Positions 39,300-49,849 of a stretch of DNA of 64,000 nucleotides are shown here, piece by piece. The stretch comes from Anolis carolinensis (Eukaryota): contig NC_085843.1 of the NCBI RefSeq assembly GCF_035594765.1, positions 207,429,971 to 207,493,970 on the forward strand, written 5' to 3'. Made by a program: the position numbers and the translations under genes. Positions within the stretch are counted from its first letter, which is position 1. Each line of letters begins with the position of its first letter. Under the pieces are notes generated by a model. It saw only the letters and a list, made by a program, of their open reading frames with translations, made no database searches and had not been told where the DNA came from.

Positions 39300-39702
39300 C
39301 ACTAAAATTATGTAACAAAATTTGAAAACTTTTCGGTTCCTAGTTTGAAAGTATTATTTCCTGTTTAATTGTGCAATACTTACTTTGAAAGTAATTGTTA
39401 TATTGCAATAACTTTGTTTTTGTGGCTGCCACAAACTATGTTGAATTGGTTGAGACTCGGTGAGATGTTTATTGAAAAACCATAGCAAAATGTGCTGCAG
39501 GATATCCCTACAAAACAAAGTGTTTGCATTTTAATAAACTTTTTATTTACCATATTTATTTACCATATTTTTACTCTGCCCATCTCACCCCAAAGGGGAT
39601 TCTGAGCAGCCTTATAAGTAGGCAACAATTTGATGATTTTATGATAGAACCAATTAGGAAATGGCATTTATAACCCAGGAACAAAAGTTGTGTTATATAG
39701 TG
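39300..39702 (-). mobile_element. Chapaev3/CMC-type MITE carrying a short L2-type tail insertion (~39541-39632)
   Basis: Reverse complement of 15791-16102; ends TGTTATATAGTG|taa. Confidence 0.78.
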
Positions 39703-39741
39703 TAATATAACATCTGCATAATCATAGCATATATCTTTCAG

Positions 39742-39921
39742 GATGCAAGGCATGCTGCGGAAGGAGAGATTTATACCAAACTTAACCAAAAGATTGATGA
39801 ATTCATCCAGCTTGCTGATTATGACTGGACCATGGTTGAGCCAGATGGGAGAGCCAGCGGCTATTTAATGGATCTCATTAATTTCTTAAGAAGCACCTTT
39901 CAGGTTTTTACTCACTTGCCT
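39742..39921 (+). CDS. EXOC6: EXOC6 exon 18 (180 nt)
   Basis: ctttcag|GAT GCA ... TTG CCT|gtaagt; DARHAAEGEIYTKLNQKIDEFIQLADYDWTMVEPDGRASGYLMDLINFLRSTFQVFTHLP. Confidence 0.97.
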
Positions 39922-40104
39922 GTAAGTATAAAAAGAACAGGCAATCTCTGTCTTGTGTATGTAATTTAAAGATGCTTTGACACCTGTGATGGAAAAAAAC
40001 AGCAACCCTTGATCTGTATGAGATGCTCCAGTGGTCTTGTGTGAAGAAGATGCTGCATTCAAACCATGGTTAAATATTATAGTTTGAAATTGACGTTTTT
40101 CAGT

Positions 40105-40386
40105 AAATCACGCCTTTCCCTTCTTCTCCTTCACGCCGCACACACCTTCCTCGGCGCCCGAGGAGGGAGCCACCACCGCCGAGGTAGGCGTGTGTGGTGT
40201 GAAGAAGGAGGGAAAGGTACTCGCCTTTCCCTCCTCCTCCTTTGCGCCGCACGCACCTTCCTCGACAGTGGCAGCAGCTCCCTCCTCCTAGGTTTTACTT
40301 TCTGGGGATGTCTTATATTTGACAATTCACCAAAACCTCTACTAAGTCTTATTTTCAAGGGATGTCTTATTTTTGGGGAAACACTG
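40105..40386. mobile_element. Tc1/mariner-type MITE remnant (CCGTGTTTCCCCGAAAATAAGAC-type end)
   Basis: Ends GATGTCTTATTTTTGGGGAAACACTG|TA; GC-rich internal duplication; a related end occurs at 35151-35215. Confidence 0.55.
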
Positions 40387-47935: not shown

Positions 47936-48172
47936 CATCTTAAGCAAAAGGATTCGATGACTTTCTAATCTTCCAGTGTGACCAAGACAGATCATAGAAA
48001 CTTCAATCTCAGATCTTATTTTTGAACCTCCAGGGAGTAAGACTTATTTGCAGAGCCTTGCTTATTTTCTTAAGAATCTGCTCCCCCTGACTGCTACCAA
48101 AGTGCAATTTGATGTTGACCGTGCATTTTAATTTTTGTTTTGTTTTGATTGGCTTACTGGTTTCCTTCTCAG

Positions 48173-48202
48173 AATAACAACAATGACCATGCTGCCATGT
48201 CG
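48173..48202 (+). CDS. EXOC6: Predicted alternative 30-nt EXOC6 microexon (NNNNDHAAMS) between exons 18 and 19
   Basis: tttccttctcag|AAT AAC AAC AAT GAC CAT GCT GCC ATG TCG|gtaagt; phase 0/0 like the host intron, no stop codon, repeat-free flanks. Confidence 0.65.
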
Positions 48203-49849
48203 GTAAGTAAATGCAAGCTAAAGGGAAAAAAAGCATGCACATGGAAAACATAGAACTATGAACTGCCTGCAGGCTTATTGCTTCAATTCAGAGTGACTTA
48301 TTAAAAACCCTCTATTTGGTCTAATCTGACTTGCTATTAAGTTGCGTGGCTGCATATGGAATCCAGGTTGAAGACTACCATGGGTCCTTTAGATGTCAAG
48401 GCAGAAGGAGCCTTTTAAAGATTCCCAGAAACAGGATAGGGCATGCACTGCATCTCAAATGAGATCATTCAAAGGGAGACCATAAGACTTCTTGGATTTG
48501 AGGTCAGGTGTCAAAATGCAGCTATTGGGTGTGCATATGAAATAAGGCCAAAATGGCCAGCTAGTGGTTGAGAATAAAGATGTGGCAAAGGTTTTAGACT
48601 CTTTCAAAAACATACTTTTTGAACTAAGTAGAATGTCTGCACCTCAATGTATTCCTTAAAGATGATGGATTGCTTTAACAGACGAATGCCCCAATTGTTT
48701 TCAGGTCAGCGCCTTGTTTTAAATCATTTCCTTGTCCCAATACAAATATTTGCATTATAATGAATAATTGCTCCTTTTAAACAGATTTACTTGTTTTGAA
48801 AAATGTCCCTTCTTTTTAAAAAAATAATTTTTGTATTTATACGGAATTGTGTCCTACCTAATTCTTTTTATCTGTTTCATGTTTTCCTGTTTGATAGCAA
48901 TGTTTCTGTATAATATTTTCCAATATTGACAAACAAAAGAAGTCAGTATAATAAATAAAATATTAGGGGCTTGGATTACTACCTTTTATATGACAAAAAG
49001 GTATCTATTCACTATTCAATTTTCTCTTTCCATTTTGGCTTTAAGTATACTCGTGACTGTAAATAGGGGAAAACTCTGAAGTATGTTATTGCAAATATAC
49101 AAGGGACACAAAGCACAAAAAGGAATAGGCTACTGGCCATTACAACAGAAATAAAACAAATTAGGCTTCATGAGAGTAAGGCCATCAAAAATGAGCAATG
49201 TATAGACACAATCTTTGTCATTTTTAACAACATTATTTCATCTGATGATGTGGCTTGATTCATTCATTACAGTTATAACATGAGCACATTGAAGGTCTGT
49301 GGCATACATACATCTCATACCAACCACTTGGTTAAAAATAGAGACACTATAATTGATTGTTTTTCTTTAAAAGTAATAAATAACCTTACTTTGAAGTCAT
49401 ATGCTTGGATGCTTGAAAGGATACCATTTTGTAATTACATAATGCAGTTCAATCCCTGTGGGATAGAAGAAAACAAATGAAACAACTTGATGTATTAATC
49501 TTGCAAAACACAGAGGCTTCAAAATTGCCAAATCCTTTAGTAGTTTACACAAGGTAATTCTAATTTTTTCAGTTACTTGCACAAATATTTTTTCTAACTT
49601 CTCAGTTTCAGACTTCATCAGTTTGTAGAACAAGCATGTATATTCTACATTTCTTTCAAAAATTATTCTTGCCCTATAGTATTTGCTTGGTCATCCAGGT
49701 TGAAATATGAAGATAGAGCCAGTTGGGTGGAGTTGAAGAAGGATGTCCAGATGTTAGTCACATCTAGTTTTTATCTACATTGCACAGAGTAACCCAGTTA
49801 ACTTAGATGATATGGAGTTTTACTGAGGAATAAAGAGGAATGAAGTCTC

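What the first reader, a model, noticed from the sequence alone, without database searches (positions are those of the whole stretch)
48100..48460. Hidden 30-nt in-frame microexon (NNNNDHAAMS) in EXOC6 intron 18
Seen in sequence: an AG-free zone at 48103-48170, a branch-point-like CTTAC at ~48153-48157, a pyrimidine tract TTTCCTTCTCAG, the 30-nt exon 48173-48202 without a stop, and a consensus donor CG|GTAAGT. It is phase 0/0, so inclusion gives FTHLP-NNNNDHAAMS-GKVAQ. GCATG motifs lie downstream (48233-48237, ~48442), TGC motifs lie upstream, and the flanks lack TEs in an otherwise TE-rich gene. Established: downstream (U)GCAUG is where RBFOX proteins enhance inclusion, upstream UGC is typical of SRRM3/4-dependent neural microexons, and the Sec15 C-terminal domain binds Rab11-GTP. 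The canonical human protein as I recall it reads HLPGKV, with no insert. Inference: a tissue-regulated (neural or muscle) exon that adds a 10-aa loop and could tune exocyst-Rab binding. It is missing from the ORF track; I cannot tell whether it is already annotated.
Basis: partly seen in the sequence, partly recalled or inferred. Interest (0 to 1): 0.8.

Follow-up and report, generated by a model that had tools for sequence, protein, structure and literature searches.

The report
Known, ancient 30-nt EXOC6 exon

Summary
The exon runs cag|AATAAC…ATGTCG|gtaagt at 48173-48202 and encodes NNNNDHAAMS, phase 0/0, between EXOC6 exons ending at 39921 and starting at 55033.

It is not a chance pseudo-exon. 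The same 10 residues sit between FTHLP and GKVAQ in 150 public EXOC6 cluster representatives. These cover turtles, birds, lizards, snakes, amphibians, bichir, sturgeon, gar, bowfin, teleosts, a marsupial, cetaceans and a colugo. In chicken, crane, sterlet, eel, piranha and killifish DNA, 26 of the 30 bases and both splice sites are invariant.

It is not hidden. Every exon in the window is identical internally to Anolis carolinensis EXOC6. RefSeq isoforms X1, X2 and X4 of that species include the exon, and X3 and X6 skip it.

The insert models as a disordered loop between two helices of the Sec15 C-terminal domain. A downstream GCATG and a CAGGCTT block are conserved in 5 of 6 lineages, which fits RBFOX-type activation. 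Anolis has no UGC near the 3' splice site, and a zebrafish neural-exon table does not list this exon.

Tissue regulation and any effect on Rab binding remain untested, because the read-laying step gave no information. Novelty: already known by annotation, with no functional study found.

The parts
39742..39921 (+). EXOC6 upstream constitutive exon (180 nt, phase 0/0), ending ...FQVFTHLP, donor gtaagt
   Evidence: translation identical to A. carolinensis EXOC6 X1 residues 603-662
48103..48172 (+). 3' splice-site region: 68-nt AG-free zone, candidate branch point CTTAC at 48153-48157, pyrimidine tract, acceptor cag
   Evidence: Nearly identical in chicken and crane (...CCTTACTGGTTTCCTTCTCAG), and CTCAG is invariant in all 7 species
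48173..48202 (+). 30-nt alternative cassette exon, phase 0/0, encoding NNNNDHAAMS
   Evidence: One search gives the translation; the peptide is present in 150 public EXOC6 representatives; 26 of 30 nt are invariant in 7 species; included in Anolis RefSeq X1, X2 and X4, skipped in X3 and X6
48203..48208 (+). 5' splice site GTAAGT
   Evidence: It is GTAAGT in 6 species and GTGAGT in killifish
48233..48237 (+). GCATG (RBFOX-type motif) 31 nt downstream of the donor
   Evidence: GCATG lies at +27 to +64 in Anolis, the birds, eel, piranha and killifish (as TGCATG), always just before the conserved block. Sterlet has ACATGC at the aligned place
48255..48284 (+). Conserved downstream intronic block ACTATGAACTGCCTGCAGGCTTATTGCTTC (core CAGGCTT); the binding factor is unknown
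   Evidence: alignable in all 7 species, and CAGGCTT is present in 5 of 6 lineages. There is no conserved RNA structure
48108..48536 (+). Conserved island around the exon (74% identity to the chicken intron over 439 columns)
   Evidence: blastn of the Anolis intron against the chicken, sterlet, killifish and eel introns
55033..55174 (+). EXOC6 downstream constitutive exon, starting GKVAQTACMSAC...
   Evidence: 100% identical to A. carolinensis X1 residues 673-719

Best explanation
Window 48173-48202 is a genuine, very old alternative cassette exon of EXOC6 (Sec15A) in Anolis carolinensis. The window's exons are identical to that species' protein. Including the exon inserts ten residues (NNNNDHAAMS) in frame between ...FTHLP and GKVAQ.... 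This lengthens a short loop between two helices of the Sec15 C-terminal domain into a flexible loop of about 12 residues, and skipping it gives the canonical protein. The exon is short and has a 68-nt AG-free zone upstream. The inference is that its recognition depends on its strong GTAAGT donor and on a conserved downstream intronic enhancer. That enhancer contains (U)GCAUG, the RBFOX site, at +31 and a CAGGCUU-containing block at +53 to +82. On that inference, inclusion would be highest in RBFOX-expressing tissues such as muscle, heart and neurons. Shown here: the exon, its splice sites, its conservation, its presence in annotated isoforms with and without it, and its position in the modelled fold. 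Inferred only: RBFOX dependence, tissue pattern and any effect on partner binding.
For: Sequence features. Peptide in public isoforms: 117 of 119 new hits, plus all 32 further hits, plus P0151. The variants are NNNNDHAAMS, NNNNDYAAMS (snakes), NNNNDHASMS (percomorphs, Pleurodeles), SNTNDHAAMS (caecilian), and TNSNDHAAMS or TNNSDHAAMS (cetaceans, colugo). Genomic conservation that does not depend on annotation: the exon and both splice sites were found in chicken, crane, sterlet, eel, piranha and killifish loci. Only 3 synonymous positions and 1 Ala>Ser position vary. Both forms are annotated in Anolis carolinensis and A. sagrei. Species identity: every internal residue of every exon in the window equals XP_008113544.2. 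The paralogue EXOC6B (119 representatives) and invertebrate Sec15 have no insert. Structure: model residues 244-251 have pLDDT below 50 and lie between helices 222-238 and 251-275. The insert is an 11-column gap against Drosophila Sec15 2A2F, and the fold match to 2A2F has TMt 0.80. Regulation: GCATG and CAGGCTT are conserved downstream in 5 of 6 lineages.
Against: Expression in this lizard therefore rests on RefSeq models, which can be partly homology-driven. Sterlet lacks an exact GCATG. No experiment or CLIP data links RBFOX to this exon, and no paper on it was found. The CAGGCUU block matches no factor I can name.
Confidence: 0.85

Rival explanations
1. It is an SRRM3/SRRM4 (eMIC)-dependent neural microexon, recognised through an upstream UGC enhancer next to the pyrimidine tract and included mainly in neurons.
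For: It is a small, frame-preserving, deeply conserved exon with highly conserved flanks, in a vesicle-trafficking gene. TGC lies within 25 nt of the acceptor in chicken and crane (-23), sterlet (-18), and eel and piranha (-7). EXOC6 has another, known neural microexon.
Against: In Anolis and killifish the last 50-60 nt of the intron contain no TGC, and the TGCs in the other species are not aligned with each other. The exon is 30 nt, above the 27-nt class. The neural-exon table of PMC12626424 includes 28-51 nt 'MINI' exons and lists only the 12-nt exoc6 event.
Confidence: 0.12
2. It is a chance pseudo-exon: strong-looking splice sites around an open 30-mer that the spliceosome does not use.
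For: Lax criteria find about 19 AG...GTRAG mini-ORF candidates in the window's two strands.
Against: The peptide and DNA are conserved over more than 400 My with a synonymous-only pattern, and the exon appears in annotated isoforms of more than 100 species.
Confidence: 0.01
3. The exon is conserved and coding, but in Anolis it is effectively constitutive or effectively silent. On this view the RefSeq with/without pair is a by-product of model building, not regulated splicing.
For: No read-level evidence was obtained here, and Gnomon models can borrow support from other species.
Against: Both forms are annotated in many independent annotations, including Anolis carolinensis, A. sagrei, eel and Pogona. 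Intronic flanks conserved as strongly as these are typical of regulated rather than constitutive exons.
Confidence: 0.07

Closest known systems
RefSeq EXOC6 isoform X1 of Anolis carolinensis (XP_008113544.1/.2) and the matching X-isoforms of other vertebrates
   Same: The same exon, with an identical peptide at an identical position. The window's exons equal this protein.
   Different: Nothing differs. The finding re-derives an annotated isoform. The annotation carries no functional or tissue information.
The known neural 12-nt EXOC6 microexon (zebrafish DreEX0031112, human HsaEX0023471; PMC12626424 supplementary file 1)
   Same: Same gene, same C-terminal region of the protein, frame-preserving and conserved in vertebrates.
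   Different: It is a different exon. It encodes VxRG between ...LLEK and MKD..., about 120 residues further on, and lies beyond the end of this window. It is listed as neural-enriched, whereas the 30-nt exon is not listed there.
RBFOX-activated micro-exons (Li et al. 2015, Genome Res, PMC4317164)
   Same: Exon of 51 nt or less with a conserved (U)GCAUG shortly downstream of the donor.
   Different: RBFOX dependence is not shown for this exon. That paper's human table lists only a 15-nt EXOC6 micro-exon elsewhere in the gene.
Snap23 microexon in striated muscle, regulated by MBNL, QKI and RBFOX2 (PMC12064062; title and abstract only, seen)
   Same: A small alternative exon in a membrane-fusion/trafficking gene with candidate RBFOX control outside the SRRM4 programme.
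   Different: A different gene and protein context. I did not read that paper's data, and there is no evidence here for MBNL or QKI sites beyond a few YGCY motifs.
Drosophila Sec15 C-terminal domain, PDB 2A2F
   Same: Same fold (TMt 0.80) and an alignable sequence (E 2e-82).
   Different: The fly protein has no insert here. The 10 residues fall in a gap between ...FKLP and HIAQ...

Membership tests
Conserved alternative cassette micro-exon (30-51 nt or less by the wider definitions) | Short internal exon with canonical AG/GT splice sites that preserves the reading frame | tested here: met
   30 nt, cag|...|gtaagt, phase 0/0, no stop
Conserved alternative cassette micro-exon (30-51 nt or less by the wider definitions) | Orthologous exon and splice sites conserved in other species | tested here: met
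   DNA of 6 other species; 150 protein representatives
Conserved alternative cassette micro-exon (30-51 nt or less by the wider definitions) | Both inclusion and skipping isoforms exist | tested here: met
   Anolis X1, X2 and X4 have the exon and X3 and X6 lack it. This is at the level of annotation, not of reads
Conserved alternative cassette micro-exon (30-51 nt or less by the wider definitions) | Spliced junction reads in RNA of this organism | tested here: inconclusive
   exon 18 had zero depth in all 4 runs, probably from silent filtering of human-like contigs.
SRRM3/4 (eMIC)-dependent neural microexons | Length 3-27 nt | tested here: not met
   The exon is 30 nt
SRRM3/4 (eMIC)-dependent neural microexons | UGC-containing enhancer close to the 3' splice site, next to the pyrimidine tract | tested here: not met
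   the nearest TGC in Anolis is at -51. It is absent in killifish and not aligned among the other species
SRRM3/4 (eMIC)-dependent neural microexons | Neural-enriched inclusion and loss on SRRM3/4 depletion | tested here: inconclusive
   the exon is absent from the zebrafish neural-exon table of PMC12626424, which does include 28-51 nt exons. Absence could also come from low coverage. There are no Anolis data
RBFOX-activated exons | (U)GCAUG in the proximal downstream intron, conserved across species | tested here: met
   GCATG at +27 to +64 in 5 of 6 lineages, at one aligned place
RBFOX-activated exons | Inclusion depends on RBFOX binding (CLIP, knock-down, motif mutation) | not testable with these tools
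   No such data were found in the literature searches
EXOC6/Sec15 C-terminal domain (Pfam PF04091) | Sequence and fold of the Sec15 C-terminal helical domain around the insert | tested here: met
   Searches (2A2F, E 2e-82; TMt 0.80), and the PF04091 annotation of all hits

The most novel reading that the evidence does not exclude
The invariant Asn-rich 10-residue loop is a functional switch, kept for more than 400 million years, that changes what the Sec15 C-terminal domain binds (Rab11 or Rab8-family GTPases, or another partner) in RBFOX-expressing tissues. This would give vertebrates two exocyst flavours from EXOC6. I found no study of this isoform, and it may be absent or rare in the human transcripts usually studied.
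Probability: 0.25. Interest if true: 0.55.

Novelty: already known. Interest (0 to 1): 0.22.

Why it matters
For the scan, this is a positive control. A reader working from raw sequence alone correctly called a 30-nt exon that ORF-based tracks miss. For biology it adds little, because the exon is already in RefSeq for this lizard and for more than 100 other vertebrates. One point is still worth noting. The ten-residue loop lies in the domain of Sec15 that is reported to bind Rab11, and it is almost invariant from bichir to lizard and only slightly changed in whales. My searches found no paper that describes its tissue pattern or function. Anyone working on exocyst isoforms could test it cheaply.

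Tried and rejected
1. I ran the search of protein representatives with exon 18 alone. The top hits were short ORFs that read through from exon 18 into the intron (…FTHLP|VS…), which says nothing about the microexon. None of the full-length representatives had an insert.

2. I ran read laying on window:39400-40300 hoping for loose ends after 39921. Exon 18 had zero depth in all four runs, although the index says they hold it. Only repeat-like pieces upstream were laid. Contigs resembling human DNA are dropped without notice, so this says nothing about expression. I did not try to get round it.

3. The look-up of encoding contigs returned no DNA for Anolis (139 kb gene), Crotalus or Terrapene because the gene range was too long. 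It had no record for non-longest isoforms. No second squamate or turtle intron could therefore be aligned.

4. I tested for a conserved RNA structure over the exon and downstream block. The result was -4.25 kcal/mol with no covariation, so I rejected it.

5. An Rfam scan of the whole window found nothing.

6. Literature searches: EXOC6 with microexon, exocyst with microexons, and EXOC6 with RBFOX, MBNL, SRRM4 or PTBP1 or with cassette-exon terms gave nothing on this exon. The MicroExonator supplements have no 'exoc6' string. The PNAS retina paper has no supplements held. The paper I asked for as PMC4390143 is not held. A search for 'N659A' found nothing, so the Rab11-site residue rests on my memory only.

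Spliced isoforms were taken only as public protein records by id. I fetched no human contig. Human coordinates appear only as quoted from a paper's supplementary table.

Full report
**Observation.** The window reads ...ttggcttactggtttccttctcag|AATAACAACAATGACCATGCTGCCATGTCG|gtaagtaaatgc..., with the exon at 48173-48202. It translates to NNNNDHAAMS.
- The only AG dinucleotides between 48080 and 48175 are at 48101 and at the acceptor (48171).
- CTTAC lies at 48153-48157.
- GCATG lies at 48233 and 48441.
- Upstream TGCs lie at 48059-48122.
- The upstream exon is 39742-39921 and ends ...FTHLP|gtaagt. The downstream exon starts at 55033 with GKVAQ.

A strict, post hoc census asked for a pyrimidine tract, an AG-free zone, YAG, 9-60 nt and GTAAGT. 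It found only this site on both strands of the window. Lax criteria gave about 19 sites.

**Which gene and genome.** Local tblastn of public EXOC6 proteins against the window places residues 42-745 of EXOC6 on 18 exons between 1525 and 58064. Every internal residue of every exon equals Anolis carolinensis EXOC6 isoform X1 (XP_008113544.2). The only mismatches are at HSP edges that run into introns. A. sagrei shows internal differences. The window is therefore A. carolinensis or something indistinguishable from it at this locus.

I looked for public proteins that already carry the insert.
- A search with exon 18 alone returned mostly intron read-through ORFs and was uninformative.
- A word search seeded from an EXOC6B fragment returned a Chelonia mydas EXOC6 model reading FTHLP-NNNNDHAAMS-....
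- Searching with that junction region ranked proteins by whether they carry the insert. Of the 119 new hits listed, 117 have a 10-residue insert between FTHLP and GKVAQ.
- A third search, seeded from the bilby protein, added 32 more, all with the insert.

The peptide variants are:

| Peptide | Where found |
|---|---|
| NNNNDHAAMS | turtles, birds, lizards, axolotl, bichir and reedfish, sturgeons and paddlefish (one sturgeon paralogue has SNNNDHAAMS), gar, bowfin, many teleosts, the bilby |
| NNNNDYAAMS | snakes |
| NNNNDHASMS | percomorph teleosts and Pleurodeles |
| SNTNDHAAMS | a caecilian |
| TNSNDHAAMS | four cetaceans |
| TNNSDHAAMS | a colugo |

None of 119 EXOC6B representatives has an insert, and no invertebrate or fungal Sec15 representative has one.

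**Evidence independent of annotation.** I fetched the EXOC6 loci of sterlet, killifish, eel, chicken, crane and piranha. I found the exon in each, in the same intron and with CTCAG|...|GT(A/G)AGT.
- 26 of the 30 exon bases are invariant.
- The four variable positions are three synonymous third positions and one Ala>Ser change.
- About 100 nt upstream is nearly identical between Anolis and chicken.
- blastn of the whole Anolis intron against the other introns picks out the exon with its flanks (48108-48536 against chicken) as a conserved island.

This rules out a chance pseudo-exon.

**Is it hidden?** No. The cluster holding the Anolis protein lists these isoforms:

| Species | Isoforms with the insert | Isoforms without it |
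|---|---|---|
| A. carolinensis | X1 (XP_008113544.1/.2), X2 (XP_016850826), X4 (XP_062832223.1) | X3 (XP_003223824.2), X6 (XP_062832225.1) |
| A. sagrei | X1, X3 | X2 |

Among the Anolis isoforms the only differences are the first exon, one glutamine at a NAGNAG-like boundary, and this exon. The exon is an annotated cassette in this very species.

**Protein context.**
- HMMER aligns the Anolis protein to the Drosophila Sec15 C-terminal domain structure 2A2F (E 2e-82). The ten residues fall in a gap between ...FKLP and HIAQ....
- An AlphaFold2 model of residues 421-829, built on a 32-sequence alignment, has mean pLDDT 87.5. It puts the insert (model residues 243-252) in a loop between helices 222-238 and 251-275, and residues 244-251 have pLDDT below 50.
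- The model matches 2A2F with TMt 0.80.
- PDB holds no vertebrate EXOC6 structure and no Sec15-Rab complex, and the tools give no coordinates. The distance from the loop to the Rab11 site could therefore not be measured.
- From memory only (Wu et al. 2005), the fly residue N659 needed for Rab11 binding is the Asn of ...QINLD.... That lies about 39 residues after the insertion point, two helices on. A search for 'N659A' found nothing to confirm this.

**Regulation.**
- Downstream of the donor, GCATG lies at +31 in Anolis, +27 in both birds, +33 in eel, +57 in piranha and +63/64 (as TGCATG) in killifish. In each case it sits just before a conserved block, ACTATGAACTGCCTGCAGGCTTATTGCTTC in Anolis (48255-48284). 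Sterlet has ACATGC at the aligned place.
- Counting the two birds as one lineage, GCATG/CATGC and CAGGCTT are the only downstream 5- to 7-mers of note shared by 5 of 6 lineages.
- RNAalifold finds no conserved structure there, so the block is more likely a protein-binding enhancer.
- Established knowledge is that (U)GCAUG downstream of an exon is where RBFOX proteins activate inclusion (for example PMC4317164 and PMC2018636, by their abstracts). I therefore rate RBFOX-type activation as the most likely mechanism, at about 50% on its own.

The SRRM3/4 reading fares worse:
- Anolis has no TGC in the last 50 nt of the intron.
- The TGCs in the other species are at different, non-aligned places (-23, -18, -7), and killifish has none.
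- The exon is 30 nt.
- Supplementary file 1 of PMC12626424 lists zebrafish neural-enriched exons of all size classes, including 28-51 nt. It contains only one exoc6 event, a 12-nt microexon. That 12-nt exon encodes VxRG near the C-terminus and lies beyond this window.
- Li et al. 2015 list only a 15-nt human EXOC6 micro-exon.

**Expression in Anolis.** Eighteen public runs hold exon 18. When four of them were laid on 39400-40300, exon 18 had zero depth, and only repeat-like pieces upstream were placed. The tool states that contigs resembling human DNA are dropped silently, and this exon is about 95% identical in protein to that of mammals. The blank is therefore uninformative, and I did not try to work round it. 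Direct junction evidence for this lizard is still missing. It rests on the RefSeq models.

**Literature.** No paper in the held library discusses this exon.

**Verdict.**
- It is wrong that the exon is hidden.
- It is unsupported on SRRM3/4, plausible on RBFOX, and untested on tissue pattern and Rab binding.
- Novelty: already known by annotation, with function unstudied as far as I could find.
- Interest is low (0.22). There is a modest upside if the loop proves to alter partner binding.

Noticed in passing
window 51071-51749 (and a weaker block at 53122-53423): A deeply conserved non-coding block lies in the same intron, about 3 kb downstream of the microexon. It is 84% identical to chicken over 686 columns and 77% to sterlet over 625, with runs of about 90 nt invariant in all three, and it is partly kept in eel. 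There is no Rfam match and no obvious codon periodicity by eye. It is probably a vertebrate enhancer-type CNE. EXOC6 neighbours HHEX and CYP26 genes, which I recall from memory.
   Followed up: partly
window 39410-39458 and 39637-39686: Two short stretches just upstream of exon 18 attract hundreds of RNA-run contigs at 95-99% identity and very high word depth, with many variant 'joints' between them. This is the signature of a high-copy interspersed repeat that is transcribed or carried in transcripts.
   Followed up: no
P0151 (Chelonia mydas EXOC6 model, 807 aa): This older turtle gene model reads exon 18, then the microexon, then a second full copy of exon 18, then exon 19. It looks like an assembly or model duplication. 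It explains the model's inflated scores.
   Followed up: no
EXOC6 C-terminus, beyond the window's 3' end (Anolis X1 residues ~783-786, VHRG): A second small EXOC6 exon of 12 nt encodes VxRG between ...LLEK and MKD.... It is present or absent among eel, sterlet, bilby and axolotl isoforms. It is the zebrafish neural microexon DreEX0031112 of PMC12626424. All listed Anolis isoforms include it. It is not in this window.
   Followed up: partly
window ~20706/20844 boundary (Anolis X1 residue Q484): Anolis isoforms X2 and X6 differ from X1 by a single glutamine at an exon boundary, which looks like a NAGNAG-type alternative acceptor.
   Followed up: no
cluster of P0291: Two proteins named cytochrome P450 26C1 isoform X1 (Podarcis raffonei and P. 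muralis, 631 aa) sit in the 90% identity cluster of lizard EXOC6. This suggests read-through or fused gene models between the neighbouring CYP26C1 and EXOC6.
   Followed up: no
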